This document shows, in pieces, positions 1,640 to 39,240 of a stretch of 64,000 nt of DNA. Origin of the DNA: Penicillus capitatus (taxonomy: Eukaryota; Plantae; Chlorophyta); contig OZ287694.1 in the NCBI GenBank assembly GCA_965649825.1, positions 433,197 to 497,196 of the forward strand, read 5' to 3'. Numbering within the stretch: position 1 is the stretch's first letter; every line of letters begins with the position of its first letter. Under the pieces are notes generated by a model that saw nothing but the letters and a program-made list of their open reading frames with translations, made no database searches and was not told the DNA's origin. The position numbers were made by a program, and so were the translations under genes.

Positions 1640-2531
1640 ATGCATCGAACGTGTGTGCCGATTCGGACGGCTGCGGTGCCACGATGTCTCGTCGGACGTC
1701 CTCGACGCCTTCGTGCTGCTCCACTGCGTCGCCAAACGATTCGCGCGACGGGATCGGATCCGCCGCCGGCAGAGGGAAGGAATTGGAATCCGTTCAAAGA
1801 GGACCCAGCCAAGCAGGTCACATCAAACGCCTTCTTTAAGGACTGCGACCCGCTTGGTTGTATAGGAGGCCGCAAAGAGGGCGGTGCAGGAGGCGATGGG
1901 CGGTCAAAAAGACGTTCTGGCAGATTTTGACGGCTCCGGTGGCGATGGGGACGACATTGGTGACGACGGCGACGAGGGATGGGATGAATGGACTTGGGAT
2001 GATATCCGAAATGAGTTCCTCGATTTCCGCCGAGCCTTATTCGAATGGCTCGCTGGAGTGGGCCGAGCCATAAAAGCCATATTCTATTTCTTCATGGGCG
2101 TACGGTCCCTTCTTCTCAGACCCAGTACTTAAGAGTGCCATCTCAGATCGTCTGCGTATCCCTCATCATACCGACCCTCCTCGCCGCAGTCACTTTCATC
2201 CGCGTGCTTCTGAGGTGTTGTCCAAAAGAGTGAGAAGAGTGAGGGATGTGGGCCGTCGTGTAGGTTGGAGAAGGCTGAAGATGTGTATGGGACGGGAGGA
2301 ACAGAGCCAGCTGGGATGCAACGCAGCGTGCTGTTCTCGGATGATGAGCAAGAGACGGAGGCGAAGTCCAAAGAGCAAGAGACGGAGGCGAAGTCCAAAG
2401 AGGAGCAAGAGACAGAGGCGAAGTCCAAAGAGCAAGAGACAGCGTCTCTCACGGAAAGGCAACGGCGTAGTCGCAAACGGCGCGAGAAGCAGAAACAGTC
2501 GAAATCTGATGAAGAAAACGAGAAGTCTTGA
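1640..2531 (+). CDS. Probable plastid-targeted membrane protein of unknown function (4 exons)
   Basis: Arg/Ala/Pro-rich transit-like N-terminus (MHRTCVPIRTAAVPRCLVGRPRRLRAA), acidic Gly-rich linker, hydrophobic segment AIFYFFM-IVCVSLIIPTLLAAVTFIRVLL, and a charged tail. GT-AG introns start near 1817, 2100 and 2214. Confidence 0.65.
2346..2444 (+). repeat. 27-bp coding tandem repeat (EQETEAKSK x ~3.5)
   Basis: gagcaagagacRgaggcgaagtccaaa at 2346, 2373 and 2403, with a partial copy at 2430. Confidence 0.95.
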
Positions 2532-3861: not shown

Positions 3862-6800
3862 TTACGGCGTACATCCCACCCAACGTTTCAACACACGGTG
3901 TACACGGGTGTGGACGAAAGCGCACCGTAAACGACATACCAAGCAAAATTTAACGATCCAGGGCTTGGAATAGTATCTATCTTTTCCAAACTCCCCCAAT
4001 GTCCAATCAACGCTACGCATCAAATGCTGCATCAAACCATAAAATAGACGGAGTACGACCAGAATCAAGATCACACACAGGACGACGAATATGACGCCAT
4101 TTCCTTCATCCAATGCATGAATTAAGCAGGCGGCAAAGTAGACGAGAAAGACGCCAAAGAGTGAGATCGTTTCCATATGACTCAACATCCGTTCGGGCTT
4201 CTCGTAGGGCGACGTCACCGAATGTGCCAAGAGAAAGAAAACAACGATACCGATGGCGACAAGCGTTTGGGTTTGGATACTGAAATGATAACCAAAGGCA
4301 AAAACAGCAGCCAGACACACCTTTCTCACAAATATTGTGAATTCCCAGTAGCGACGCTTATATTTGTACGCCTCGAACAGGAGTCCCCACGAACGGAGAC
4401 GTTCTGTTTTGCCTAGATTCTTGTGGATGCACAGAAAGACCAGAAAACTGACAGGGAATAGAACGAGCGTTATCAAGAGGAGTGGAAGACTGAAGTAGAG
4501 AAGCAGGTGTTGGTGGGCACCTTCGTAACAGATGACAGAGGTATCTTCAAGCCAGACATAGTTTTTCTCCTCGGGCGTTTGAGATTCGAGTGATGTACAG
4601 CTTAAGCTTCGGAAACAGGTGTGACAGACTGGAAGAAAGAATACATAAAATACAGCCACCAAGGAATTCTTCGCCCTTTGCCACAAAAGGGAAAGCGAAA
4701 AAGAACGATCCACAAGAAAGACGAGAAGCCAGAAAGTGAGAAAGAGTGTCGAGACCACGATCGGTGCCAAGAGAACGAAAACGAAGGACTGGATAGAAGC
4801 CGGTGCTCCGGAACGCCCGGCGCCTCCAAACATGCATTCCAAGGAGAAGTATGGACTGGAACCTGTTCCTAAGAAACCTGTGAGAAAAGAGTGAGATGCG
4901 TGGCGGATGAGAGAGGAGCTTTACTGAAGAGGCGTAAGATGCCATTGGTGGCGGCGGACCAGTTAATCTGAATGTACAGCGCCAAGCTAACGGACTGGAA
5001 AAACGTCAACAGTATCTGTCGGACAGAATTGAGTGAGGGCAACGTGCGAAAGAGTGACCTTCAGAGCTTCGGATAGAAGAGGTTTCAGGAGGACGTGCGA
5101 TTCGCTGATGATGTCAAAATCTTCGATGCTGAGGATTTGTCGGTGTTGGGGTTTCGCTATGTGAATCGCCGGCGTTATTTCGTTCCTGGTGCCGGACGAG
5201 CTCGATGAAGCGTTGTCTCTTATCGGCGATGTCACTCTGGGCGTCGCGCTCGGCGATGCTGGGGCAGAGCTGTGCGTTTTTTCGGTGTGATGATCGGCAG
5301 ATGTACTCGGCAGCGCTTCGGACGTGGATCGGCGCGATTCTTTTGCCCGTTGGCCACGAATGCCAAACGAAGCGATCGGCTCCAGATGCTCCGGAATCGG
5401 CTCTGCCTCGACATCTCCTTCGCCAAGAGCTAATGAACCACTCGTACTCGTCATCTGTATGTCAGCCGCCGGCGGCTGCTGAGCAGACGGCTCTCTGGCT
5501 ATACCGTAATCCGATACCCAGCTTGTCTTGATGAAGAAGACGGTGACGAAAAAGAAATAGATCATGAAAAGCACACCGTACATGATGCTCGCTCCTCGAT
5601 GGCATTCTTGGCACTCTTGGGCGCGGATATGACCGTAGCCATCCTCACATTCCCCGCACAACGCCCCCGTATATCCCTAACGCCCACAGATCATATAGAT
5701 CATTCGTAGAGTGACCGAAAGTGTGACCTCAATGCATGGATCGATGAGGAGCGGAGCTGCGCGTAGTGTATCGGCGTGCGGAATGACTTGGTTGTTTTCA
5801 CACGCTTGCGGCCGGACGCACTTGAGCACTTTGGTCGATGCCGTGTCGGCATTCCAGTAACCGTCTTGCGCCACGACGTATCCACCGGAGCAGACGGCGT
5901 GATCTGGGCACTGCTGACAGCCGCCATCTGCCATCGTCGTATAGCCGCCATCTTCGCACTCCACACAATACAGTCCATCCAATCTCTCCCCTGCGCCGCA
6001 CGGCGCGACGTGCACCGCGACGATATCGATGAGGTCGTTCCCCTGCTTCACACGCAACGTGTAGGCTCCCGGTTTCGCCGAGAGGACGATGCCATCGAAC
6101 TCCGCCGAGCCGTGATGCAGATGCGTCCGATTCTCGCCCTCTAGGCGGACGTGATCAGCAGCCCAGACGGAAAGCTCCAGATCGGCAAAGGGCACCATCT
6201 GGCCCAAGGCATCGATATCTCGTACGAGAATCACGTCCAGGACGTCGCCGCTCCTGTGATGGCGTATCTCTTCTGGCGTCACCTCGAGGAAATGACTCTC
6301 CGTTGAGAACAGCGGACCGTAGCCTTCGTCGCCAACGCGGTTGCCTTGATCCACGTCGGGGCAGATGTCGTGAAAGGAAGCCATAAGCGATGGCTCCAGC
6401 GGATGCAGGACAGCACCGTCCAGGCAATCGCAGCAGAGCTGGAACACTTCTGGACTTCTCGGGATGTGCACGCCGCCGCCAGAGATCTCGGCCACGTTGC
6501 CTTCGAACTGCACGTCGGCCAAGAGAACGCGATTCTCCGGAGACTCGGTGTGGACAGGCGAGGGCGGTATGGCGTAGATCCCGCCTCCCTGGCAGGCCGT
6601 GTTCTCCAAGAACATCGTTTCGGTCATAGAGGACACCACAACGTCCGCTGCGAAGGTGAGATTCCACAGAACGGCGCCGCCAAGCTGCGCCCTGTTGCGC
6701 CAGAAGATGGTGTACAAGATGTGCACTTCGTTTGGGGAAGAGAGGGCCAACGATCCCCCTTCCTCCGCCGTGTTATTCTGGAAATCGCTGCGGGTGATGT

Positions 6801-9800
6801 GCACGTGGATCATCGCCTTCCGCTGCGTGCGATCGATATGGACGGCGCCGCCCATCGAACCCCAGCGACGATAGTAGGCCAATCTCTCCGGGCAAAGACT
6901 GTTGTTGAAATGGACTTGACCGACGCTGTTGTGCGCGAATTGCGTGTCGTTGACCATCAGAGAGGTATCTTCAGCATGAATGGCTCCGCCGGACTGGTCG
7001 GCTGTGTTGTAAAGAAGCTCCAGTTCATGAAGTTGGGTCGTGGAGGTTATGTTGGCAAGGTAGATGGCCCCTCCGTATGCTGCGCTGTTGGATAGGAAGG
7101 TTGTGTTTTTGATGTGACTGGCCGCCGCCGTGTGGCTAAGAAACAGGCCGCCGCCGTTGCGTCCAGCTTGATTGGACGTCGCACTGCTGTTGTACAGAGA
7201 GATCCAACTGCCGGACTCCAAAAACAACCCGCCGCCGTTACGGTACGCCGCGTTGTGTGTGATCTCGACAGAATGTAAGGACAAATGGACTGGGCCAGTG
7301 AGATAGACAGCGCCGCCACTGGAAAGGAATGGCACGGAGAGAGGAGAACTCCGTGGACTGGCGACGTTTCTCCGAAACTGACTCCGAAAGAACCGCAACA
7401 GCGATGTCCCATTCCCTCCCTACACGCAGCCCTTGGATCTTCCGCCGAGTCATAAGAGTGAACGACTTTGCAGAAAATGGCGGCGCCGCCTTCGCGCGTG
7501 GCTGAGTTGTTGATAAAGTGCATTTCGGAGCCCTGCATCTCGATGTCTGCCGCTATGTAGAACGCCCCACCCGCGCGTGCTTCGTTCCTCGTCGCCTCCA
7601 CATCTGTCAGCAATGCTTGCGTCGATGCCTCGGTCGATATCGCTCCGCCATATGTCGCACGATTGCGTGAGACGACAGATCTTAGCATGCCAACAACTGC
7701 CCGTCCCTATCACATCCACCTTACACACGATCGAAACGCACGTGGGATAAGGATCACCTCTCGTAGCGCTATGGCGCCTCCCTTCGACGTGGCTCGATTG
7801 TCCAGGAGGATCGATCCGTTGAAGAAGAGGGAATTCGATCCTTGGCTATAAATCCCGCCGCCATCTTCACTCGCTGCGTTGCGCCGCCACTGTGTGCCGT
7901 TCATGAAGCGTGCGGCAACAGCTCCCCGCTTCTTCCCATCCTCCGATGGACTGATCAAACAGAGCGCCCCACCCGATGCCGCTACATTGTCCTCAAATCG
8001 TGCATCGTCTGTTGCTAAGGACACGCGTCTCTCCCGTGCCTATACCATAACCGTAGGACACACGTCGTCATGTGTGACCTTGGCTCACTTCGACATAGAC
8101 AGCGCCGCCCAGCCGCCGTCCGTTGTTGTGCATAAAGAGCGTTCCGTTGATGTGGCATCGATATCCATCGACGTAGTAAATGCCTCCCCCTTTGTCCGCT
8201 TCATTGCCCTCGAATTGGACATCATAGCTGCTGCGCATACATACACCTTTCCCCACGAGATGCAGACCTCCTCCGTGGAGTGCCGCGCTGTTGTTCATCA
8301 ATTTCACATGAGAGATCAATTGGATCACGAGTTTGTTGAATCGGTGGTCGACGGCCGATATCGCGCCGCCTTTTTTTGCCTCATTAAACTCAAAACCACA
8401 CTGCGAGAACGTCATGACGGCACCATTGATGCCATGTATGCCTCCGCCTCGATGCTCGGCACGATTGCTGGCGAAACGCGTGCCGTTTTGCATGTCGACA
8501 GTGGCAGTACTTATGAAGAGGCCGCCGCCATCTTCAGCGTAATTGCTGGACACATCGACATCATTGAACTCCATCGACGTCTTGTTCCGTCTCCCAAACG
8601 CCCCCTACGTCATCACCCCCCATCGCCGCTCAGCTTCTCGCCAGCTTCTTATCTCCGCGTACTTGGCAGTAGATGCCGCCGCCGGTTGTGGCGTTGTTCG
8701 ATGTAAAGGTGGATCGTACAATGGACAGTCGTACAAGCGGCCCCACTCTGAGGGCACCGCCATCTTTGCGTGCCTGATTGTTTGAAAACGTTTGCAATGT
8801 GATCTCGGCTTTGATTGGGCCTTCTAAAAATACACCCCCACCTGAAAGCGCGTAGTTCTTCGCTAGCCAAGAACTCTGCATAATCAAAGATCCCATCGGA
8901 CGATCCTGCAAACGTCACATCAAAAAGAGTGACATCCGCGAGATGGCGGCGCAGCATCACCTTTGTTCTCGAATAAAGAAAGCCTCCAACGGCCAGAGCC
9001 GTATTGTGTATCACCTGCGAATTTATTACTGTCATCCGTGCGACGTTCTGTGAAGCGATCACGCCTCCACGTCTCGCTGAGTTGCTCTCGGCTGTCAGTC
9101 CTCTAATGTCGACTTCTAAGTATCGTCCAGTGAAAGACAAACACCCGCCGTCGCCCAGAGCGCGGTTCGCTCGGCATTCACACTGCTCCATCTCTACCCT
9201 TGACGCCTCCCTTTGCCCCTAAACATGTGCACCACCTCCTTCAGCCGCCAGCCGCCAGAAGAGGCGAGATGTACATAGGCTGAGAAGGTGCTGCCGCTGT
9301 CTTCTGCGTTGTTTTTTCGAAAGGAGCAGTTGTGTAGAGTGGCGATGGCGACGTCCCTTGTCAAGAGAGATCGTCCTCTCTGTCTTCGGAACACCGTGTC
9401 CCGCACTTCTAATTGATCGAACTGATCCAGGGCGACGGTTGCATCGCCGTCACGGGCGGCATTATCTTCGAAGATGCTCATAGAGATGTGCAAACGCCCT
9501 CCACGATACCCCCCAATAAGCCGGATGGCTCGATTGCGCCGGAAAACGACGTTCTGAATCGAGATGGCAGAATTCGAGGCGCCTTGGATCACAGCGGTGC
9601 CTCTCTTGCCTTCCACTCTTTCGATCACCGAATTCTGCACCGTCAGATTTCCGTTCACCCAAATCGCCGATCCTTTATCCACGAGGCAGCCGCCGATCTT
9701 GATATGATCCAGAACAACATCCGAATCTCTAATGACATTAATGAGAGTCATTAAAGTCATTAACGATCTGCCTTTACTCGATCTGCAGCATCCGTTGCCC

Positions 9801-10293: not shown

Positions 10294-10554
10294 TGAACTG
10301 AAATGCATTGCACCCGTTGACATCCCGATGGCGATAAGCGCGCTGAACGTCACATCGTCAGACGTCACATCAAGAAGACCGCAAGCGTTACGTGAAGTTT
10401 ACGCTGGTTGGTTGGTAGTTAAGCACGACAGATCCATGAGCAGTATTTATTGTACGACACAAACCACCCGGAAAACAAACCGATCGACACCGATAGAAAA
10501 ACAGGTAAGATGGGATCGACGTAGCAGCCATGAGATAAGCGCTGGTGTGGTTGG

Positions 10555-12876
10555 TCACTCGGATGGCGGACCGACGGTTGAATGGAACATGTCTTCCATG
10601 TGCTTCATTCTCGTGTACATGGTGTGAAACACTTTTCTCTTGTCCACTCTCTTCTGCGTGTAGACGTCCAATACGTGCGAGGCGGAGGGGAAATCGCGAA
10701 TCCAGGTATCCACACGACGCTCCTGCAGGTCATCCATCTACACACAGCCGCCAGTGCCTGTCACATCATAGATCAAAAGGATCGCGGATCTCACTCTAAT
10801 GATCGCATGGATCAAGCCGTCATTGTCGGCGCGTTCCACATCGGGTCGGACTTTGCAACTGAGGACCAAAGTGCCTGGCATAGAGAGACTGAGACGGCAG
10901 ACAAAGGTCCCCGCCGGTTCGTGCTGCAAGGCCTGAACCGTAGCCCTTCGATCCAGATGCAGTCCAGAGATCACACACGGATTCTCTGTGTTCCACACCG
11001 GAGCGATGCGCTTTAACATGCTCAAGACATCGCGGAACTGCCCCGTAAACTCCGTCCACTGACCCATGGAGATGCCAGCTGGACCGCCGCCGATAGGAAA
11101 GCCTGCCTGAGATTCGAGCGTCTGCAGATCGAGCTCCGTCAGACGACGCTTGAGTCCCGTCCCATCATACTCTTCCAGAATCCAGTCCCGCAATGCCTGT
11201 CTCGAATAGGGCAGCGTCACTTCGGGCTCCCCACCTTCGACCCTCGACTCCGAATCGTCCATTTCCGCCAGGGCGTCGCGCATCATGTCTAAGGAATCGT
11301 TATCGTGATGACGTTTGCTCGATGGCCTGTAGTGCACCGACGACTCGCTTTTGATGCCGTCCGTTGCCGTCTCGGATTCCATCGCACGCATCGGAATGCC
11401 CAGTTTGTCCGATGCCTTGATACGCTGCTCCGCTCGACAGATTCCGACGGTTGGGATGTGGTAGACACAGTAAAGCAGATCGCAGTCCAGAATGGTACAG
11501 GCAAAGCAGATGTAGACCTTGCTCATACGCGTCGGTTTGAGAAACTCGAGATTGGAGAATTCGAATTCGTGGGTCAGTGTCTGTTCCTGATTGCCGGCGT
11601 TGCTGTTGACGAGATCATCTACCGTCGGTTTCTGCTCCGGCGGCGACGTATACTCGCGACCGTAGTGCTCCGTCTTGATCCCCAGCGATGCCTGTCGGTC
11701 AAAGCCTTGCAGATGCGCCGCCGGTGGGAGATGTGACGGATCGGTGTTGTCGAGGATGTCGTGGATCATATGGGAGTAGTTCAGCCCGTCGGTAAATTCT
11801 CCGGTCATCTGGTTGGGATAGGGATAGACATTGCCGCCCTCTTCGCTGTAGAATTGCTGTTGCGCGTTGGTCGGTTGCATGAAGAGGTGCTCAGAGGTCA
11901 TGCCCTGCACCAGCGTCCCTTCCTGCCCCGGGAGAAACGTCGGTCCCGGCAGGGACGTCGGCATCGGTGTCTGGATCACGGATGATGGGACAACGTGCGG
12001 AATCGATGAGAGATAGGGCGCGCCGCCACCGACCAGACTCGACGAGAGCACCGACTGGAGACACACCAAGCGTCAGACACAGCTTCCGTGCAGCTTCGGT
12101 ATGGGCGATACCTGGTAGTGGTGACTCATGGGGTCGTGCTTCAGATAGAGACCCCCTGCTTCGATGCTCGATTCAAACTGCTGTGTGATGTAGGTGGTGC
12201 CCTTGAGCTCCGTAGGCGCCCGGCGCTCGACGGTATTGAGATTGGTGACGTGACTGCCAGTCGAGAGATGCACGAAGCCGTTATTGCGTCCGCCCTGTAC
12301 ATCGAAATCCGCCATCCCTTCTGGCCGCCACTCCGGCAGATTATCCTTCTCCTGCTGCGACAAGATATGCGCCCGGATGGTCAGGGGAAAATTCACACGG
12401 CCACGGTAGCGCACATCGACGCGGATCTTGAAATCCGGCGTCAGTCTCCTGCGCGGCACACAACGACGACATCCATCAAGGATCCCTCCCGCAGCTGTCG
12501 GTCCTACCTGTCCTGTTTGACCGGCACAGCAAACTCCGCTGGCGCCGAGATGATGCGCATCTGGATGGCGTGAGGCAGAGCAGCACCGGGGGACATCGAA
12601 GGCACCGACGAGAGATTCAGCATCGTCTCTTCACGGTTACGCAGTGGACTCGACGTCAGTTCCCAACCGTTTTGTGTGACCTGGCCTTCGTGTTGCCCCT
12701 GGTAACGCACGTAGGTCGACTGCCAGCGTTGGACGTCTGACAGAGGGCATCGCGATGAGGGCGAGGCGAGAAGGCAGAGCGATGGGACCTTTCATAGCAG
12801 CGCGTCGTTGGACGAGGGTATGGATATCGTCGCTCCAGTAGGGCGGAGTATCCGGCTCAACGCGTGGCTCCGTCAT
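10555..12876 (-). CDS. STAT-like protein: STAT-type Ig-fold DNA-binding segments, low-complexity insert, linker and SH2 domain
   Basis: SH2 core ALQHEPAGTFVCRLSLSMPGTLVLS with the conserved Arg; linker WTEFTGQFRDVLSMLKRIAPVWN; DBD-like IRAHILSQQEK and LEFLKPTRMSKVYICF...PTVGICRAEQ. Exons join in phase. Confidence 0.75.
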
Positions 12877-13108
12877 GGTTCAATACAGAAGGGGACGGAG
12901 ACGCTCTTGTAGGAGACCGTGCAGAGAAGGACGTTGATTTCGCAGTGGACTTCGGCGACAGGATTCGGATTTTCGTGGCGTTGACGAAGAGGACGTGTCG
13001 AACGAGCAAACACACGCGGCAACACGAATAGCACGAGTGTACGACGCGTGGGAGACGGAGGAAGAGGAAGAAAGCAGGAGGAAACGTCACATCATGAGTC
13101 GGTCGCGG

Positions 13109-16100
13109 TCACATCGGCAGCGATAGCAACAGCGCTGTACCGCGTAGAATCCAGTGGTCTGGAGAGAGGGCGCCCGGTTTGAGATCGATATGTGTGAGAA
13201 AAGAGGGACGTTCGCGGGTGCCGGAGCGCAGGGCAGTGAGATAGACGGGACAGGAGTAGTGCCGTTTGGCGGCGGAGCGGCGGCGCTGTTCGACAGGGCG
13301 AAACCAGAGGACCGGCATATCGACCGTCAGCTCCATGGGATGCGGTTCACAGAGCTCCTCCCGTTTGACGTCCCATCCAGCGCCTTCGAGAAAGAACCCT
13401 CGGACGTAGACGCCTTCATCTGGCGGCGTCTCGACGTCTTGCGCGACGGAGACGTCGAAGACCAGGGAGTCGATGGGGAGGCCGTGGAAACGCGCGGCGG
13501 TTTGGAGAACGGCAGTGAGGAAGCCGTTGGGATAGGTAAAGGCAGAGAGCCAGTAGACCGTCGGCTCGACACCGCGACTCCATTGGGCAAACTGTTCCAG
13601 ACGGAGAAGGAGATCGCGCGTCCACGACGCCAGCGGCTTGAGGGAAGGATAGGCACGACTCCATGCCGTCGGCACACGGCCGTCACGCAGGGCGGCGTAG
13701 ATCTCATCGAGATCGGCACTCATCACGATCCAGCCCTTGATTCCGCGCAGCAGTTGCGTACAGGAATGCCGTACAGTCGAGAGCAGGACGTTATAACGCT
13801 CGGTCTCTTGCTGCAGCACGACGTTCAGCGCAGAGGCGTCATCGGGATGCCGCTCACGGATGCGATCCAGATCGAACGCCGCCGGGAGAAGTTGGAGTAC
13901 GCTCTCGGCGGTCTCTTCCACCGATGGCCCCGCCGCCGCCGCCGCCGCGCCGTCACATCGTGCGGTAGGCTGAAGACGGACAAGAGTATCGACGAGGGAC
14001 TGGCCTTCTTCGCGGAGATACGAGATCTCTGCATTGGGATGCTGACCGAAAGCTTCGGGCGCGTCCGTCAAGGGAAGGGACTGGATATACGACAGCGCGC
14101 CGTCCACGGAGGCATCCTCCGGGATGCAGTAGAGATCGAGATCGGCCAGCGGGTAACGTGAGCGATGGACGGCATCTTCGCAGTAGAATCGGTTGAGGTA
14201 GCTGTTGAGCACCCGGCGATCGAGCTCGTCCGTCACCCGGCCGCCGTAGTTCGCCTCGGCAATGAGATACCGCAGCGCATCCCACGGGATCTCGCGGTAG
14301 CTCTCGAGATAGGACCGCAGCAGATCGTCCGACACGCGGAAATCGGTGTCGTTAAAGTCGTAGGGGATGTTGAATCCCAGCGAGCGGAATTTTCGCCGTT
14401 CCAGCAAGGTGCTGTGAAAGTAGGCGAGGGAGAAGAGCAGTTTTGAGTAGTCGTGGTATTTGGTGCAGGAGGTGAGACGTTCCTCTTCGATGGTGTGCTG
14501 GTAGAGTCGGTGGAGATTGGCGTGGAGGCCCTTCGGCGGCTCGGTCGTCATTTTGATCCCGCGCTGGAGGATGGACATCGGAAAGAGGGGGGAGGGATTG
14601 GAGGAGAGCCAGAGACGGAAGTCCGGATGCGGATGCTTGGCGTCGAGATCCTGGAGAATCTTTTCCAGCGTCGGTAGCCAACGCGTCATGAGATGGCAGT
14701 TGGCGAGAAAGATCCAGTGGCCGTCGCGAATGCCCCGTTCGATAAGTCGCATCGCAATCGGCGCCTGGCCTTGGCCCAGTGCCACGACGAAGAGCCGGTC
14801 GTCCATGTCCATCTCGACGGCGAGTTTGCGCAGTGGCTGCGTCGGGTCGACGCCCGGCGAGAGAACGAAGATCAGCGGCGAAAGCGGCGTGGAGTCGCGT
14901 AAGGTGTCTCGCAGATCGAGCACCGGTGCCTCGGTGTAGGGCGCGCCTAAGGATGCCCGGACGTAGCACGCGGCGCCGAAGACGACGCGATCAGGTCTAG
15001 AGGAAGACGCACGTCGCCGGTAGGTATTGCGGAGAGGGTGACCTGAGACAGCGCAGTAGGTTGAGTTTTGTGAGGGCGTTGCTGTCGTGTGGCGGCGCCG
15101 CCTTCTCCGGTTCTTTCAGGCGATACCATCGCTGCCATTTCTCCCCGTCGGTCGACAGGCTCTGCACGATCGATGTGTCGTCGAGGAGCGTCTGCAGCGC
15201 TGCGAGGGATTCCGCCGCCGCTTTCGGCAGCCACTGTGGGAAGGACGCATTGAGATCGGACGCACGGTGCAGTGTCGACGGTCCTCTGAGAAAGAACCCG
15301 AACTCCGCCTCTGCCAGCTTCCCTTCGGCGCGTTCAATGCTGAAGGCCATCTGCAACGACAGCAGAAGCTTATGGCGCTCAAACAACCCTCTCGCGGTAT
15401 ATCTGCCCACATCACACTTATTCCTGAGCCCGGCGAAAGAGTGAGATGCCGTGCTTGTAGACAGAATAGGTGTGGTAGGCATTGAGGGCGTCCATACGTT
15501 CTTGGACGTTGTCTTTCTTGGGGCTGTTCTCCAGCGACAGACGAAAGAGCGCTTCGTAGGCCTCGAGCGAAAACTGGTACATAGGGTCGACCGCCGCCAG
15601 ATCGTTGAGGACGAAGAAGAGCACGGCACCGCGCAGCGCACAAGGCTCGTACGCACGCGCCGCCGCATCGATCTCTCTCGCCGTCGTTTCCGCCACCTTA
15701 AAACCACACGCGCCGCCATTTCGCTGGATCCTATTGATGTGACGTCCAGTCCACCTGCAGCGAGGCGTTGATTTCTTCGTAGGTGACTTTGGAACGGTCC
15801 AGAGCGTCGATGAGATCGACGTTGTCGAGGAGCGATCCGGACGCGGACGAGAGCAGCTCGAGGATCTGATCTTCCAATGCCAGTTGCGATCGCTTCCCTT
15901 CGGCGACTTTTACCTACAGCACGCGCCTTAGACCATCGCCATCTTTGTGGCGGCGGCGGTGGCGGCGGCGGTTCCCACCACAAGGGCGTTCTTTTGCGTG
16001 TAGAGATCGGATCGCTCGTATTGCACGACGGTATCCAGCAGCTGCGCCTGAAGTCCTTGCTGCTTCACGGCAAAGTTCACGATCATGACTTTGGTGCTGA

Positions 16101-19100
16101 TCTCTGGGGTATAGTGCGGCGATGATAATTTCGTCGTCATAAAAAACTGAAAATCTGGATGGACGTCCACTTCCTTATCGCCCAGTTTCAGACACAGGCG
16201 ATTTCCCTAAACCCAACGTCCTGACCCGAGCCAAGCATCAGCCGCCACCTTTTTGCGAAAGGCCCGAGCGAGAAGCGGTTCCAGTACGGGATCGATGCTC
16301 TCCTTGACGTCTTCCAACAGAACGGGCGTGCCGAACTGAATGGCGTTCTCCAAGGAGCGCAACATATCGGCGGCGTTAGGATTGACGACGACGAGACCGT
16401 CGGCGCTCTTCTTGTTCTTGATCCATTTGTTCGCCTGGCCCTGCGGATCGATCATAAGCGGCCATCGACGTCCTCTACCATCGCCGCGTGAAAAATCCAC
16501 TCGAGCGACGCGATGGTCGTCACCTTGTTACCATCACACCGTTCTCGGTGCTAAAGGCATCGGCCGGTAGGCCCTGAATATTCCAGTCGCGTACATCCGC
16601 GGGATTCGCCATAAAGGTCTCGAAATTGAAGGCGGCTGAGGCGCGCACCTGACGCTTCTGTATCTCCGGGATCCAGATCTGTACACCGCGCCGTCAGGAG
16701 AGGGGAGAAGGGGAGGGTCGTTGACTTGGTGCACGAGCTGCGTTCGGTACTCGGAAGGAAACGGACCGCAGTAAGACATAAAGGCAATGGCCAGGGCGAC
16801 GTCGCCAGGGAGGCAATGTATCTGATGCTCCAGAGACGCGATCGACCCCTCCCATCGTTGCCGCTCTTCCGCCAGACCTGTCACGAGTTTGTGCGCCCGT
16901 TCAAGTTTTTCTTCGAGATCGGTGAGCTCGGTCTCCAACGCCTTCTTGTTGCTCGTCGATTCTTCGTAGCGCTCTCTGAGGCTCTGCACGTATACGGTGA
17001 TCAAAGTGGCGGCGGATGATGTGACGTGAGGTGCGGACCTGCACTTTCGCCAGTACTTCTGCCAGCTGCTCCTGAGCGCCGGCCAAATCTGCTCGCTTCT
17101 TCGCCAGGTCCTTTTGCGCAGCTCTGAGTTTCTCTCTCTTAGGAGCGACCTCCTTCGCCACGTTCCCGTACACCTCCATCGCCCGCACCCACAGACATAG
17201 TCCTGTGCAACGCCCTTAGGCATCCGCCGCCGCCGCCTGGCAAAGACGCCATACCTCTTGCGGCGGAGGAGACGTTTCCAATGACCTCCGGCGTGAAATC
17301 CGCCTGCGTCGTAAATCGGCGAATCTTTTTCAGCCGACCGTCGTCGAGTTTGTCCTGCGCCGCCACATCCGTCCGCTGCTGTACGCGACGGCCAATGGGA
17401 GACCTTATCGAATCGAACGAGTTTCTCCATGAAGCTCGCATCGCCCAATGCTTTCTTCGACTCTTCCCACGTCGCCGGTCGGTTCAGCACCGTCATGACC
17501 CCGCCCAGGGTCAGTTCGACCAGAGCTGGCGGCTTGGCGTATGCCTTGAGCTCGGACATGTCTTTCTTTGTCAGCACATTCAGCGCCTCCTCCGCCGCCT
17601 GCAACGCCGGCAGCGCTTTGTCCAGTTCCGACTGCACCGCCGTCGCAATGTCATTCGCCTCGGCTGCCTCGCGTCCAATCTTCTCCGTCTTCGCATTTAC
17701 CTGTAAGCGCCGCGGTCAGCCCATCCCGTCGGCGGCGGCGGCGGCGGCTGCGGTTACCTGTTTCTCTTGTTCGTCGGCAATGCGCTTGTCTTTGACGATA
17801 TGAACGAGCAGCTCCTCACATTCGACCTTCGCTGTCGCCACGTGCGTCTTCTTCTCTTCGCACACGATTCGCATTTCCGTCACCTGCAACGCACCACGCG
17901 TCTCTGCATCCAGCTCGGCGTGCAGGTGCGTCTGACTTGCGTGGAGGTCTCGTCGAGTTTCTCCAAACCGCCCGTCAGTTTTTCCAACGTGCTTCTTAGC
18001 ACATCGCGCTTCTCTTTCATCAGTCCTTTGTATCCGCGCACCGTCTCGAGATAGTTCGTCGGTGTGACGTCGTTCTGTCGGCCGATATCTCTCAACATAC
18101 GCCGCGACATCTCGCACACCGACTGATGCACGCGCACAAAGACCTGCGCCGACAGGACGGGCAGACATCACACGCCAGTAAGAGCGTGCGTACGTTCGCT
18201 TACTTGGCAGATGGCATGAAGCTCTTCGGCATCGACCAGGTGCTCGGATTCGAACTGCTTCAGTGCGACTTCGTACAGCGCGTCATCGGGCCATTCGGTA
18301 AACCAGTCGATCGTCGTGCCGTTGACGAGACCTGCGAGATGGGTCACGTCTTGCGTGAGAAATCGGGACGTGCGTGCCTGGAAATGTGCGACATCGTTGA
18401 CGGAAGGCCTCGCCGACGGGGCTCATGCACAGGACCACGTGTGTATTCGCCCGGACGCGTTCCATAAAGAAATGCTCCAGTGTCTCTGGCGAGCGATCCG
18501 CCTGAACCTGTCCGTCACATCAGACGTCACACCGATCACACTTTGCCGTGGCGGCGTTGCCTGTTTGGCGGCCGGTCGGATGTCTTCCAGCAGCGCCGCG
18601 AGCTCGTCTTTCTCGAACAGCCGCGGCACTTCGCCAGATGTCAGCATACCGTTGATGCATTCCAGAAAGCTCTCGTTCAGTATCTGCGTGTCGTCAAAGA
18701 GAAACACCGTTGGGCGATTCAGCACGCCGGTGCGTCGATAGAGCTCTTTGAGATCCTCTCGGAATTCGACCTGTGCGCCGCCACACGGACGTCATGGCGG
18801 CGCGATGTGACGTGGCGGCGCACCTCCCTGTAGTTCTTCGTGATCTCCACCACGAACACCTGCTGTCCAGCCAGGTAGGCAGCGAGTCGGGCAAGGCTCT
18901 TGCGTCCACTACCGCCGATTCCGACCAGCAGCGGATGACCTGTCGGTTGAGTGATGATCCGATGGATGCGGCAGAGGTGATGCAAGGCGTCTTTGAATAG
19001 CACCAGATCCATCGGGACATTGCCCGACTCGAGACCGTAATCCTCCAACGCACGTTCGGCCCGTTCTTTCAGCCGAGCGACATCATCAATCGCTTCGTAA

Positions 19101-22100
19101 GGCGGATCCTCGACGTCTCGTACGAAGCTCGTGAACGGCGGTACCTCGCCGTTGTGGAAGAGCTCCTCCCACGTCACACCGAAGGCGCTTGTCAGCCGTT
19201 CGGCGGTTGTCCTTTGGAGCCACTGACGATCGTCGCGATCCCACATTCGATCGCCAAAGATCCGCTGGATCTCATGGACCCATAACCGTAGCATCGACTC
19301 CCGCGAATCGACCTCGTCGTGCCGAACCTGCAAGAGGCTCTGGACCATCTTCGTCAGATCTCGTGTGTTAAAGAGATAGTGACTCTTGGACGGCGTCGGC
19401 AGCAACTCCCGTGATATGGCCCTAACGCAACGGCAGCATGAGTGGCGAGTGGCGGCGGGGGAGATGACCTGTAGAGATGGACGGTTGCTTCGACGATCTT
19501 GTCCGCGTTGCTTCGGATGTCGTGATCGAACTGGACGAGTCCATGGCCGAGCAGCGTCGAGTAGATTCGCTGCAGCTGCTCGTCGCTCGGTTGGGTGATA
19601 TTGAGCAGAGAGAAGCAGCACTGGATGCGTGGACTGAAAGGATGTCGACCACCTCCTGGCGGCGCCATGGCGGCGACGACGCGCACGTCTCGGATCCACG
19701 CCGCCTCGCAGCGCCGCCGGTCGTACCAGAACCCATAGTCATTCCACATCTTGAGCAGCTCCAGTGGCGGGATGAAACCAAAGGGCGACGTCTGCGGCAT
19801 GTTGAGGTCGTCCAGAAAGGCCACGAGGGTCTTGCCGCCTGGAGGTCCGTAAACACCCTTCGTGCGTTTCTCCAGTCGATTCTCGATCGCGTCCTGTAAG
19901 GCATTGGACGATGTCTGGGCAGAGAAGTTGAGTCGGAGCGTGGTGCGGTCTTCAGGAAGGGCATCGAGGACGTGTGTGAGCGATAAGGTTTTGCCATGGC
20001 CGACGCCTCCGACGACGAGGACGTTGTGGTGGCGGTGGACGAGGGCGGAGATGAGAAAGGTGTGGCGGACGGTGTCGACGGTGGGTACAAGGATTTTGGA
20101 GATGGGAAGAGGTGGTGGACGGTAGCTTCGACTCAGCTTCGTCTCCCAGTGCACCCACGAAAGCGTCGCCAGATCGACGGCGTAGTCGAAGACGATGCCG
20201 ACCACTGGGATCTGCGGATCGAGATCGCGGATGAAACCATCGAACCTGCAGAAAGGCGATGGAGGAAAGTCGATGGGATGATCATCTCACTCTTTTCGAC
20301 CAGCTTCGTCTAAGCTTCCGCCGATGCCCCAAATGAGTGAGAAGAGAAACCACATCTCCATGCGTCGTTTGAGGCTCTCTTTGCCGCGAGACGTCACATC
20401 ATCCGGTTGACAGAAACTGTCAAAGTACTGCGTGAATGTCCGGACGCTGCTCAAGGGATCGCACGAGATAATCTCCTATAGCAACACCCATCCACGTCTT
20501 ATATATACCCTTTGCCGTGCCGCTCCACACCTGGCAGCGCTTCTTATACATAAGCGCGACGTCCATGTGTGCATCGAGGAGAGAACGTAAAATGTCGTGG
20601 GCTTCCGGCACGTCACGTCTTTTCTCGACCCACGATGCGACAAACGGTCGCCATCCCATGTCTTCCACGTTCAGATAGATCATTCCCGCTCTGCTAACCG
20701 TCGCTGGCGACGCCTGCGACAGATCCTCGACCTCGAAGAGAAGGGACACTTGAGGCGGCATCGAGATACGCTCGCCACTAAGCAGCGTCAGGAGTTTGTT
20801 ATCATCGAGCAGCGTGTTCATCGATTCGATCCATAAGGTATCGACGGGACCATCGAAAAGGATCCACTTCTGATCGAGCGATTCGTCCTTGCAGACACGT
20901 CGCATCGTCTTCGCCAGCACGCCGTCACGCCATTCGTTGGTATTCGGATCGAAGCTGCCGTAGAGCTCTTCGCTGGAAAGCGCCAAAGGATTGATCACGT
21001 CGACGTGCACCTTCGCATAGAGCTCATGCTGCGGGTGTTCTGTATGGAGGGCCGTCAGGGATTGCTGCAGCATCCGCCAGGCAGTCGATTTGCCGGAGCC
21101 CGTTTTGCCGACGATCATATTACCATGTCGCGCCACTTTGCAATCGAAAATCTCGATCACTTTCGATACGAAACGATCGACGACCTGCGGCACGTCCTCG
21201 CCATCACGTCCAATCGACGGTTGGCTACCTGCAGCCCGTTCTGCACGAGTGTCTGGCGAATGGCGGTGTGCAAGGCGCTGTCTTCTTGTGGCGGAAGATC
21301 GACTCCAGGGAAGAGATCGGAAAGGAGTGACATGAAAAGTGTGAGATCTTTGTAGACGAGCTTCGGCCGAATGAGCTCCAACATCGTCCGATACATCACG
21401 ACCTCCTCCTTCACCTCCTCCCCGCAGCGTCGCCTCAGCGATCCCGCCGCTCGGGCGATGGGAATGACGAACGATCGCAGACCGTAATCGTAGTGATCCT
21501 GTTTCGACAGTTGCTGCTGCGAAAGCTCCATGATCGCAATCATCTTTTTCGCCAAGATCTTCGCCGAAGAGAAGCCCTCGGCGAACATCATGATCTCGGC
21601 GATGAGCGTAAAATCGGGGACCATCATCGAGATCGGTCGTAAAATGGCTTTTAGATTATCGGGCAGCTCCGATCGCCCGGCGTAGCCAGGATTCATCGTC
21701 ACGAAAACGGCACAGGAAGGAATCAGCCGAATCTCGTGCCCGAAGAAATCGAAACGCGAAGCCTGTTGCTTGATCGCCTGTCGCGCCGCCGTCAGGACGG
21801 AAAGATTTTTCATAGGGTGTTGTCTTGCCTGCATGAGTGTCGAGATCTGTGTGGCCACGACGGAGAGCACCTCCACTTCGATGCGGTTGAATTCGTCGAG
21901 GCATGCCCAGGCACCCGTCTGCGCGAGACCGCTGAACATCTTCTCCGTCATTTTGTAGTCGACGCCGTCGCTGCAGTTGAAGACGAGGACATAACGCGCC
22001 AGCGCTTTGCCGAAATCCTTAACCGTCTCTGTCTTGCCCGTGCCGGCTGGGCCGAGTGGGTTGCCGCCACGTCGGGTGAACATCGCTGCCCCAAGGGTCA

Positions 22101-39000: not shown

Positions 39001-39240
39001 ACGCCCCCTGCATCGCCTTCGGGACTTACGGGTGGGCCCGACGCCTCTAAAATGCGCCCAACGGTCCGCGCCACAACCGGCACGCGGTTTCCGCCGTCTA
39101 CGTCAGCGTCTTGTGTGGTGGTGTGCGAGAGGATACTTTGGTACTTCGTATGACGGAACGACCAATACGACGTGTTCGACGCATCGGATTCAAACTTTGG
39201 AACTGCAGGGGAGTATCTCACGGAAAGAAAGAATGACGGA
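36035..39240. repeat. Nested tandem array: 7 full near-identical units (425, 399, 352, 400, 352, 595, 375 bp) plus degenerate flanking copies, each carrying 1-10 copies of a 24-bp subrepeat
   Basis: Anchor gaaaggtggacgcctcatgg at 36081, 36506, 36905, 37257, 37657, 38009, 38604 and 38979; 24-mer atactttgatacttcgaaaattgg. Confidence 0.98.

What the first reader, a model, noticed from the sequence alone, without database searches (positions are those of the whole stretch)
10555..12876. Apparently complete STAT-like transcription factor (DNA-binding domain + linker + SH2) in a green alga
Besides an SH2 with the phosphotyrosine-binding Arg (GTFVCRLS) and a STAT-type linker, two segments match my recollection of STAT DNA-binding domains. 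PLTIRAHILSQQEK resembles STAT5 PPQVKATIISEQQAK. FSNLEFLKPTRMSKVYICF...PTVGICRAEQ resembles Dictyostelium STATa LKFLAGTRKCSVNLKF...PFVVITNECQ. The two halves are separated by a long Pro/Ser/Gln-rich insertion. The SH2 ends VDKRKVFHTMY, and the short tail after it has no further Tyr, so activation may differ from JAK-STAT. Plant STAT-like proteins are mostly known as linker-SH2 proteins, so a retained DBD would bear on STAT origins and phosphotyrosine signalling in algae.
Basis: partly seen in the sequence, partly recalled or inferred. Interest (0 to 1): 0.8.

Follow-up and report, generated by a model that had tools for sequence, protein, structure and literature searches.

The report
Green-algal STAT-core transcription factor gene
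This green-algal gene encodes a protein with the core of an animal or slime-mould STAT transcription factor: a beta-sandwich DNA-binding-type domain, a helical linker and a phosphotyrosine-reading SH2 domain. It lacks the coiled coil and the tail tyrosine, which suggests that the STAT core is older than usually stated.

Summary

- **Family.** It belongs to a family conserved across core Chlorophyta: Caulerpa, Ostreobium, Ulva, Chlamydomonas CHLRE_12g489150, Volvox, Dunaliella, Raphidocelis, Haematococcus. A second paralogous family without the long insertion also exists.
- **Linker + SH2.** This part is clearly STAT-type. hhalign against verified STAT1/3/5A/6 gives probability 97.7%, E=1.5e-12. 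The best PDB hit is Dictyostelium STATa. The R605-x-S607-x-S609 pocket matches STAT3 R609/S611/S613.
- **DNA-binding-type domain.** Its two halves (aa 84-202 and 373-444) fold into one confident beta-sandwich once the disordered 170-aa insertion is removed (pLDDT 86, pTM 0.84). Its best structural matches are STAT DNA-binding domains, but only moderately (Foldseek E=2e-3, probability 0.9-1.0, TM about 0.3).
- **Sequence support for that domain** is weak but above null: hhalign score 20.3 against shuffles of 12.1±1.9, with 0 of 150 reaching it. Pfam STAT_bind does not hit.
- **Missing parts.** There is no N-domain, coiled coil or tail phosphotyrosine.

DNA binding and phosphotyrosine control are inferred, not shown. 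I rate it a new variant of a known kind, of moderate to high interest.

The parts
10555..12876 (-). Whole gene. Five coding exons: 12876-12789, 12736-12508, 12448-12112, 12054-10795, 10737-10555 (stop codon 10557-10555). Four GT-AG introns of 52, 59, 57 and 57 nt. The product is 698 aa.
   Evidence: The splice junctions are confirmed by a gap-free alignment to P0001 and other orthologues.
12576..12876 (-). N-terminal conserved region, aa 1-83 (RWQSTYVRY...GW). It has short helices and one strand that pack on the beta-sandwich. It is not a coiled coil.
   Evidence: Conservation is shown. In the DBD construct, aa 11-60 have pLDDT 93-98, and the secondary structure is H18-23, H31-34, E35-40, H61-68.
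12160..12575 (-). N-terminal half of the beta-sandwich, aa 84-202 (contains intron 2). It includes the invariant loop APAEFxxPVKQDRR (aa 94-107), the strands FKIRVDV and PLTIRAHILSQQ, and TELKGTTYITQQFE.
   Evidence: hhalign pairs FKIRVDV with STAT3 FTTKVRL, and PLTIRAHILSQQEK with the STAT5 PPQVKATIISEQQAK column block.
11593..12159 (-). Disordered insertion rich in P, G, S and Q, aa 203-372 (contains intron 3). It sits in a loop of the beta-sandwich. It carries a conserved acidic-hydrophobic motif, xN[FY]SxMIxDILD (aa 310-320, window 11781-11749), which may be a transactivation motif.
   Evidence: pLDDT is below 50 for aa 203-370. The motif is conserved in the Ulvophyceae-type orthologues (columns 470-495). 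The paralogous family lacks the insertion.
11377..11592 (-). C-terminal half of the beta-sandwich, aa 373-444: EFEFSNLEFLKPTRMSKVYICF...IPTVGICRAEQRIKA. R394, R425 and Q428 are conserved in both paralogous families.
   Evidence: hhalign pairs IPTVGICRAEQ with STAT3 LPVVVISNICQ. In that pairing R425 sits at the position of Asn466, and Q428 matches the Gln that is present in all four STATs aligned.
11215..11376 (-). Disordered spacer, aa 445-498. It has a conserved basic patch, SSKRHH (aa 463-468, window 11322-11305). The patch reads [KR][KR]R in orthologues and K-K/R-x-R in the paralogous family. It may be a nuclear localisation signal.
   Evidence: pLDDT is below 50 for aa 445-498. The basic patch appears in alignment columns 880-900 and in the paralogue sequences. 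The NLS role is inference.
10984..11214 (-). Helical linker domain, aa 499-575 (helices 503-515, 525-534, 548-567, 569-572).
   Evidence: pLDDT is about 90. The PDB profile hit to Dictyostelium STATa covers profile positions 535-607. hhalign of linker plus SH2 against STAT gives probability 97.7%, E=1.5e-12.
10612..10983 (-). SH2 domain, aa 576-680 (contains intron 4). The pocket is R587, R605, S607 and S609. It ends in VDKRKVFHTMY with the invariant Y679.
   Evidence: Pfam SH2 scores E=0.021 in this protein. It hits 31 of 38 family members, best E=2.9e-7.
10558..10611 (-). Short C-terminal tail, aa 681-698. It has no tyrosine and is not conserved.

Best explanation
The gene encodes a minimal STAT-type transcription factor. 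A short conserved N-terminal cap is followed by a p53/STAT-like beta-sandwich DNA-binding domain, a four-helix linker and a STAT-type SH2 domain.

**Shown here**
- The gene model.
- Conservation of the family across core Chlorophyta.
- Homology of the linker-SH2 to STATs.
- Conservation of the pocket residues R-x-S-x-S, at the positions of the residues that form the phosphotyrosine pocket in STAT3 (their role there is my recollection).
- A confident beta-sandwich fold for the two halves, with STAT DNA-binding domains as its best structural neighbours, in the same order along the chain as in STATs.

**Inferred**
- The domain binds DNA through its most conserved loops: VKQDRR, KPTRMxK and ICRAEQR. 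The last of these carries Arg425 where STAT1/3 have a DNA-contacting Asn.
- The 170-aa disordered insertion, with its conserved NFSxMIQDIL motif, acts as a transactivation region placed inside a DBD loop instead of at the C-terminus.
- The basic patch in the spacer is a nuclear localisation signal.
- The SH2 reads a phosphotyrosine made by a dual-specificity or TKL kinase.

There is no tail tyrosine, so activation cannot be the classical reciprocal tail-pTyr/SH2 dimer. More likely the SH2 docks on a phosphorylated partner in trans, or on a tyrosine within the insertion.
For: **Gene and family**
- Gene model.
- Family: 32 chlorophyte homologues, and 616 representatives at E<=1e-3, including a second paralogous family.
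- Conserved blocks fall exactly on the predicted domains.

**Linker and SH2**
- PDB profile search: the best hit is Dictyostelium STATa 1uur, E=8.4e-6.
- hhalign against STAT1/3/5A/6 cores that were verified against PDB: full length gives probability 97.1%, E=6e-11 and 348 collinear columns, query 99-695 against template 9-383. Linker plus SH2 alone gives probability 97.7%, E=1.5e-12.

**Beta-sandwich domain**
- Full-length AF2 model searched with Foldseek: the top 22 hits are all STATs, E=3e-7 to 2e-4, with 322-365 aligned columns. Cbl TKB comes next, at E about 1e-2.
- DBD-only construct: pLDDT 86.4, pTM 0.84. Dictyostelium STATa is its top hit, and STAT5b, STAT1, STAT5a and STAT6 also rank among the best at probability 0.9-1.0. 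Other Ig-like folds (RhoGDI, VPS26, arrestin-like ARRDC3, GM2 activator, p53, T-box) lie among them at probability 0.15-0.63.
- DBD-only hhalign: score 20.3, P=0.016, 113 columns. The shuffled null is 12.1±1.9 and 0 of 150 shuffles reach the observed score. Cross-domain and reversed controls score 8.8-14.5.
Against: - No Pfam STAT_bind, STAT_alpha or STAT_int hit in any of the 38 family members, even at E<=10.
- The DBD-only profile finds no STAT in the PDB by sequence.
- DBD-only hhalign probability is only 2.8%.
- Foldseek TM-scores are low (0.2-0.33) and rmsd is 6-10 Å, so the fold match is moderate. Generic Ig-like sandwiches also appear in the list.
- The coiled coil, N-domain and tail phosphotyrosine are absent.
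- There is no experimental evidence for DNA binding, phosphotyrosine binding or nuclear localisation.
- The DBD construct was modelled with the insertion deleted.
Confidence: 0.65

Rival explanations
1. Only the linker-SH2 is homologous to STATs. On this view the N-terminal beta-sandwich is an unrelated or convergent Ig-like domain used for protein-protein contacts, and the protein is a cytoplasmic phosphotyrosine or phosphoserine adaptor rather than a DNA-binding factor.
For: - There is no Pfam STAT_bind hit and no PDB sequence hit for the DBD profile.
- DBD-only hhalign probability is 2.8%.
- Foldseek TM is about 0.3, and other Ig-like folds appear in the same E-value range.
- Published reviews hold that STATs grew by adding domains onto an ancient linker-SH2 (PMC3670131).
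Against: - STAT DBDs from five different STATs take most of the top Foldseek ranks, at probability 0.9-1.0. The generic sandwiches among them score 0.15-0.63.
- Domain order and spacing are collinear with STATs.
- The hallmark motif P-[TV]-V-x-I-x-x-x-x-Q is shared.
- The hhalign score exceeds all 150 shuffles.
- The strongest conservation lies in basic loops rather than in the hydrophobic core.
Confidence: 0.2
2. The protein is a STAT-core homologue whose SH2 no longer reads phosphotyrosine. Like the SPT6 SH2, it would bind phosphoserine or phosphothreonine, or an unphosphorylated ligand, and the protein would act as a constitutive nuclear factor.
For: - There is no tail tyrosine.
- Plants lack classical tyrosine kinases, and a review questions phosphotyrosine-dependent function of plant STAT-like proteins (PMC8331091).
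- Pfam SH2 scores below its gathering threshold in this protein (15.4 bits against 21).
Against: - R605, S607, S609 and R587 are invariant, and they are spaced exactly as STAT3 R609, S611 and S613.
- 31 of 38 family members hit Pfam SH2, best E=2.9e-7.
Confidence: 0.12
3. The family reached green algae by horizontal transfer from an amoebozoan or holozoan STAT and then lost its coiled coil.
For: Dictyostelium STATa is the best PDB hit by both sequence and structure.
Against: - The family, and a second paralogous family, are spread over Ulvophyceae, Chlorophyceae, Trebouxiophyceae and Chlorodendrophyceae.
- Identity to STATs is only about 15-19%.
- The gene has host-type short introns.
Confidence: 0.03

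Closest known systems
Dictyostelium discoideum STATa (PDB 1UUR/1UUS) and the other amoebozoan STATs
   Same: - It is the best PDB match by sequence profile (E=8.4e-6).
- It is also the best match for the DBD-only model (E=2.1e-3, probability 1.00).
- It shares the same order of beta-sandwich DBD, helical linker and SH2.
- Like the algal protein, it has no metazoan-type N-domain or C-terminal transactivation domain (PMC3670263).
   Different: - Dictyostelium STATs have a coiled-coil domain and a tail tyrosine for reciprocal SH2 dimerisation. The algal protein has only an 83-aa cap and no tail tyrosine.
- The algal DBD is split by a 170-aa disordered insertion.
Metazoan STAT1/3/5/6 core fragments
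   Same: - hhalign gives probability 97% over 348 collinear columns.
- The R-x-S-x-S phosphotyrosine pocket is the same.
- The SH2 ends in a comparable motif, 'F-x-x-x-Y'.
- The DBD motif LP-V-V-x-I-x-x-x-x-Q is shared.
   Different: - There is no STAT_int, STAT_alpha or STAT_bind Pfam signature.
- There is no pTyr tail and no C-terminal transactivation domain.
- Arg replaces the Asn of the 'ISN' motif.
- Identity is about 15-19%.
Land-plant STAT-type linker-SH2 factors (STATL, Arabidopsis SHA/SHB; Gao et al. 2004, as cited in PMC8331091 and PMC3670131)
   Same: They are Viridiplantae proteins with a STAT-type linker-SH2 and no conserved tail tyrosine. Their DBD is described as 'poorly conserved'.
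   Different: A direct relationship was not tested, because none of my searches returned a land-plant protein. In the algal family the sandwich is the most conserved part of the protein and models confidently.
Cbl tyrosine-kinase-binding domain (four-helix bundle + EF-hand + SH2)
   Same: It is the second-best structural class for the full-length model (E about 1e-2, roughly 170-190 columns). The match is to the helical EF-hand-like unit plus SH2.
   Different: There is no four-helix bundle or RING, the match is much weaker than to STATs, and a beta-sandwich lies upstream instead.

Membership tests
STAT transcription factors | SH2 domain with the phosphotyrosine-pocket Arg (betaB5) and flanking Ser residues | tested here: met
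   R605, S607 and S609 are invariant in 25 orthologues. They align to STAT3 R609, S611 and S613. Pfam SH2 hits 31 of 38 family members.
STAT transcription factors | Helical linker domain fused directly to the SH2, detectable as STAT-type by sequence | tested here: met
   hhalign of linker plus SH2 gives probability 97.7%, E=1.5e-12. The PDB profile hit to 1uur spans the linker-SH2 junction. AF2 predicts four helices at aa 503-572.
STAT transcription factors | Ig-like (p53-like) beta-sandwich DNA-binding domain immediately N-terminal of the linker, judged by fold | tested here: met
   The DBD construct models with pLDDT 86 and pTM 0.84. Foldseek top hits are STAT DBDs, but only at E=2e-3 to 1e-2 and TM 0.25-0.33. 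The full-length alignment to STATs spans 322-365 columns. The strength of this match is moderate.
STAT transcription factors | Sequence signature of the STAT DNA-binding domain (Pfam STAT_bind PF02864) | tested here: not met
   None of the 38 members hits it at E<=10. The DBD profile finds no STAT in the PDB. Only a weak profile-profile signal remains: score 20.3, P=0.016, above all 150 shuffles.
STAT transcription factors | Four-helix coiled-coil domain (STAT_alpha) and N-terminal interaction domain (STAT_int) | tested here: not met
   Only 83 aa precede the sandwich, and they form short helices and one strand. There are no Pfam hits.
STAT transcription factors | Regulatory tyrosine in the tail C-terminal of the SH2, for reciprocal pTyr-SH2 dimerisation | tested here: not met
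   The last Tyr is Y679. It aligns with the structural 'KYY' position at the SH2 end. The tails of orthologues have no conserved Tyr.
STAT transcription factors | Sequence-specific DNA binding (GAS-type palindromes) and signal-induced nuclear accumulation | not testable with these tools
   This needs DAP-seq or EMSA and localisation experiments.
Plant STAT-like linker-SH2 factors (STATL/SHA/SHB) | Detectable sequence homology to the Arabidopsis STATL proteins | not tested
   No land-plant sequence was retrieved (top 150 only), 44 or 58.
Cbl TKB domain | Four-helix bundle + EF-hand + SH2, followed by a RING | tested here: not met
   Foldseek gives E about 1e-2 to the EF-hand/SH2 part only. A beta-sandwich, not a helical bundle, lies upstream.
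SPT6-type tandem SH2 | Pfam SH2_2 tandem SH2 at the C-terminus of an SPT6 elongation factor | tested here: not met
   SH2_2 hits 1 of 38 members at E=0.84. There is a single SH2 and no SPT6 domains.

The most novel reading that the evidence does not exclude
The DBD-linker-SH2 STAT core was not assembled in Amorphea by adding domains onto an old linker-SH2. It already existed in the common ancestor of green algae and of amoebozoans plus animals. Green algae would then still run a JAK-independent route from phosphotyrosine to transcription. In that route a minimal STAT with no coiled coil and no tail tyrosine, and with its activation region inserted in a DBD loop, is switched on by docking its SH2 on a phosphorylated partner in trans.
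Probability: 0.35. Interest if true: 0.8.

Novelty: new variant of a known kind. Interest (0 to 1): 0.62.

Why it matters
Reviews place the origin of STATs in amoebozoans and animals. They treat plant STAT-like proteins as linker-SH2 relics with a poorly conserved DNA-binding region and doubtful phosphotyrosine function (PMC3670131, PMC3670263, PMC8331091).

This family is conserved across core Chlorophyta. It has a well-folded STAT-like sandwich, an intact phosphotyrosine pocket and a Chlamydomonas orthologue (CHLRE_12g489150). Two open questions therefore become testable in a tractable alga. First, how old is the STAT core? Second, what reads tyrosine phosphorylation in the green lineage, which lacks classical tyrosine kinases and has almost no SH2 proteins? 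The family would also be a natural example of a STAT that must work without the tail-tyrosine dimer switch.

Tried and rejected
1. **Single-sequence searches.** Pfam gives only a sub-threshold SH2, and PDB phmmer gives nothing. These were not informative on their own.
2. **DBD-only profile against PDB sequences**. There was no STAT hit, only noise such as spectrin and a T-cell receptor chain.
4. **Search for land-plant relatives from P0064**. I had guessed P0064 to be a streptophyte protein. Its named relatives are Ostreobium and Bryopsis, so it is an ulvophyte paralogue.
5. **Third homologue search, with a STAT3 bait row added to the alignment**. It returned only the already known chlorophyte proteins. 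No land-plant STATL and no true STATs were found, so this was a dead end.
6. **Pfam scan of all 38 members at E<=10 for STAT_bind, STAT_alpha and the STAT linker**. None hit.
7. **Literature**. I found no paper describing a STAT-type DBD in green algae. Gao et al. 2004 and the Liu & Nash papers are not held.
8. **Y679 as the regulatory phosphotyrosine.** I judged this unlikely, because it aligns to the structural F-x-x-x-Y at the SH2 end that is shared with STAT1/5/6. Its Y-x-R-[LM] context does not exclude it.
9. **tRNA and Rfam scans of the window.** Both were empty.
Full report
**1. What is in the sequence**

Translating the minus strand of 10400-13100 shows long open stretches in changing frames, joined by short GT...AG intervals. 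Splicing out four introns gives one 2097-nt reading frame. The introns are 12788-12737, 12507-12449, 12111-12055 and 10794-10738, of 52-59 nt each. The frame runs from the ATG at 12876 to the TGA at 10557-10555 and encodes 698 aa. An in-frame stop lies two codons upstream of the ATG.

The last tyrosine is Y679.

Upstream on the same strand, with a gap of only 232 nt, lies the 3' end of a very large dynein heavy-chain gene (about 13109-27400).

**2. Family and organism**

The spliced protein finds 32 homologues, and every named one is a chlorophyte:
- Ostreobium
- Caulerpa
- Chlamydomonas reinhardtii CHLRE_12g489150
- Volvox
- Pleodorina
- Dunaliella
- Raphidocelis
- Haematococcus

The best hit, P0001, is 69% identical over the full length and comes from 2.4-kb contigs that are probably transcripts. 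It aligns without gaps across all four predicted splice junctions, which validates the gene model. A 94%-identical fragment lies on two large metagenome contigs with the same neighbours, a dynein upstream and a PMP-repeat ORF downstream.

A profile search of 1.84 billion representatives finds 616 proteins at E<=1e-3. Among them is a second, paralogous chlorophyte family that has the same blocks but no long insertion. It occurs in Botryococcus, Myrmecia, Tetraselmis, Bryopsis and Ostreobium, and more divergent relatives occur in Ulva and Micractinium.

No land-plant protein and no bona fide STAT appeared in any list I could see.

**3. Domain anatomy**

Conservation is concentrated in five blocks:

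| Block | Residues | Conserved sequence |
|---|---|---|
| 1 | aa 30-60 | RWQSTYVRY..GW |
| 2 | aa 88-150 | APAEFxxPVKQDRRLxPxFKVRV...PLTxRAHxLSQQEKD..W |
| 3 | aa 185-200 | TELKGTTxITHHFE |
| 4 | aa 380-440 | EFEFxNLEFLKPTRMxKVY...PTVGICRAEQRxKA |
| 5 | aa 505-685 | linker and SH2 |

AlphaFold2 on the full length is confident exactly in these blocks. It is disordered in aa 157-183, 203-370 and 445-498.

With the insertion removed (aa 1-206 plus 372-448) and a 38-sequence alignment, the N-terminal part folds into a single beta-sandwich. Mean pLDDT is 86.4 and pTM is 0.84. The two 'halves' therefore belong to one domain, split by a 170-aa loop rich in P, G, S and Q.

**4. Is it STAT-like?**

*Linker and SH2: yes, clearly.*
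- The family profile's best PDB hit is Dictyostelium STATa (E=8.4e-6), across the linker-SH2 junction.
STAT6 was copied from the PDB alignment output.
- hhalign of the algal alignment against these four gives probability 97.1%, E=6e-11 over 348 collinear columns, query 99-695 against template 9-383.
- Linker plus SH2 alone gives probability 97.7%, E=1.5e-12.
- GTFVCRLSLS aligns with GTFLLRFSESS. Invariant R605, S607 and S609 thus fall at STAT3 R609, S611 and S613.
- VFHTMY aligns with the STAT 'aFgkYY' end of the SH2.

*DNA-binding domain: yes at fold level, weakly at sequence level.*
- The full-length model's top 22 Foldseek hits are all STATs (STAT5a, STAT5b, STAT6, STAT2 and Dictyostelium STATa). 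Their E-values run from 3e-7 to 2e-4 and they align over 322-365 columns. That is far more than the roughly 190 residues of linker plus SH2. The next class is Cbl TKB at E about 1e-2.
- The DBD-only model has Dictyostelium STATa as its top hit (E=2.1e-3, probability 1.00). STAT5b, STAT1, STAT5a and STAT6 also rank among the best, at probability 0.9-1.0.
- Other Ig-like sandwiches lie among these STAT hits but score lower, at probability 0.15-0.63. They are RhoGDI, VPS26, arrestin-like ARRDC3, GM2 activator, p53 and T-box.
- TM-scores are low (0.25-0.33) and rmsd is 6-10 Å.
- Pfam STAT_bind does not hit any of the 38 members, and the DBD profile finds no STAT by sequence in the PDB.
- DBD-only hhalign gives a collinear 113-column alignment with score 20.3 and P=0.016 (probability 2.8%).
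- In that alignment FKIRVDV pairs with FTTKVRL, and PLTIRAHILSQQEK pairs with the STAT5 PPQVKATIISEQQAK columns.
- EFEFSNLEF pairs with AEFKHLTL, and IPTVGICRAEQ pairs with LPVVVISNICQ.
- Controls: 150 column shuffles give 12.1±1.9 with a maximum of 19.5. The reversed and cross-domain controls give 8.8-14.5.

Three observations point the same way: the shared domain order next to a strongly homologous linker-SH2, the fold match and the weak sequence signal. Taken together I put the probability that this is a true STAT-type DBD homologue at about 0.8.

**5. What is missing or different**

- Only 83 residues precede the sandwich. They form short helices and one strand that pack on it. There is no N-domain and no four-helix coiled coil.
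- There is no tyrosine after Y679, and orthologue tails show no conserved Tyr. Y679 matches the structural F-x-x-x-Y of STAT1/5/6 rather than the regulatory site.
- The sandwich carries a large disordered insertion with a conserved acidic-hydrophobic motif: LNYSHMIHDILD here, xNFSxMIQDILE in relatives.
- In the 'ISN' motif, invariant Arg425 replaces the Asn of STAT1/3. That this Asn contacts DNA is my recollection of the STAT1 and STAT3 DNA complexes.
- The Gln four residues later is shared by the algal family and all four STATs aligned.

**6. Likely mechanism**

*Shown:* a conserved STAT-core architecture whose phosphotyrosine-pocket residues are all conserved.

*Inferred:*
- DNA binding occurs through the most conserved basic loops: K103/R106/R107, K391/R394/K397 and R425/Q428/R429.
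- Nuclear import uses the basic patch in the spacer, SSKRHH. In the paralogous family this patch is a clear K-K/R-x-R motif.
- Transactivation comes from the P/S/Q-rich insertion.
- Regulation acts through SH2 docking on a phosphotyrosine in trans, since the classical reciprocal tail-pTyr dimer is impossible.

*Rivals:*
- An adaptor with an unrelated Ig-like domain (confidence 0.2).
- A STAT homologue whose SH2 no longer reads phosphotyrosine (0.12).
- Horizontal acquisition (0.03).

**7. Comparison with what is known, and novelty**

Reviews state that a distant linker-SH2 orthologue exists in plants and that STATs arose by domain accretion in mycetozoa and metazoa (PMC3670131). They also describe amoebozoan STATs with coiled coil, DBD and SH2 as the earliest STAT-like proteins (PMC3670263). 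A 2021 review says the DBD and Tyr sites of plant STAT-like proteins are poorly conserved (PMC8331091).

I found no paper describing a STAT-type DBD in green algae. Database entries call these proteins only 'SH2 domain-containing' or 'hypothetical'.

I therefore file this as a new variant of a known kind: a minimal STAT core in Chlorophyta. It is not a canonical STAT family member, because three defining features tested negative: the coiled coil and N-domain, the tail tyrosine, and the STAT_bind sequence signature. Its relationship to land-plant STATL proteins could not be tested here.

**8. Verdict**

- Interest is 0.62.

Noticed in passing
window 13109-27400, minus strand: A very large dynein heavy-chain gene lies here. 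Pfam hits include DHC_N1, DHC_N2, the MT-binding stalk, AAA_lid_11 and Dynein_C. It ends only 232 nt upstream of the STAT-like ATG, so intergenic spacing is very tight. It also suggests a flagellated or ciliated life stage.
   Followed up: partly
window 5677-7398, minus strand; L001/L002 9476-12414: A long ORF carries Chlamydia-PMP-type repeats (Pfam Chlam_PMP, E=1.9e-18). It lies downstream of the STAT-like gene. The order dynein, STAT-like, PMP-repeat is kept on two metagenome contigs of a close relative (ENA ERZ26696514). Those contigs are nearly identical to each other around the gene, so they may be two haplotypes.
   Followed up: partly
window 36229-39148: A tandem array of 352-400-bp units (96-99% identical copies) is flanked and interspersed by a 24-bp sub-repeat, AAAATTGGATACTTTGATACTTCG. 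It lies where window GC drops from about 0.58 to about 0.49.
   Followed up: no
window 44661-45327 (inside ORF 44125-46173, minus strand): A 156-bp tandem repeat occurs here (4.3 copies, 81% matches). It lies inside a 682-aa ORF that has no Pfam hit, which may encode a repeat protein.
   Followed up: no
window 11749-11781 (aa 310-320); alignment A1 columns about 470-495: A conserved short motif, xN[FY]SxMIxDIL[DE], sits in the middle of the otherwise unconserved disordered insertion. It looks like an acidic-hydrophobic activation or docking motif.
   Followed up: partly
proteins P0049, P0051, P0053, P0057, P0061, P0064, P0068, P0069, P0073, P0077: A second chlorophyte paralogous family has the same sandwich-linker-SH2 blocks but no long insertion. 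It carries a clear K-K/R-x-R basic motif after the sandwich and a more STAT-like SH2 strand (GTFLVRLCSEPG). The window does not contain this paralogue.
   Followed up: partly
window 2346-2440: A short 27-30-bp tandem repeat (3 copies, 90-93% matches) lies in a region with overlapping ORFs on both strands.
   Followed up: no
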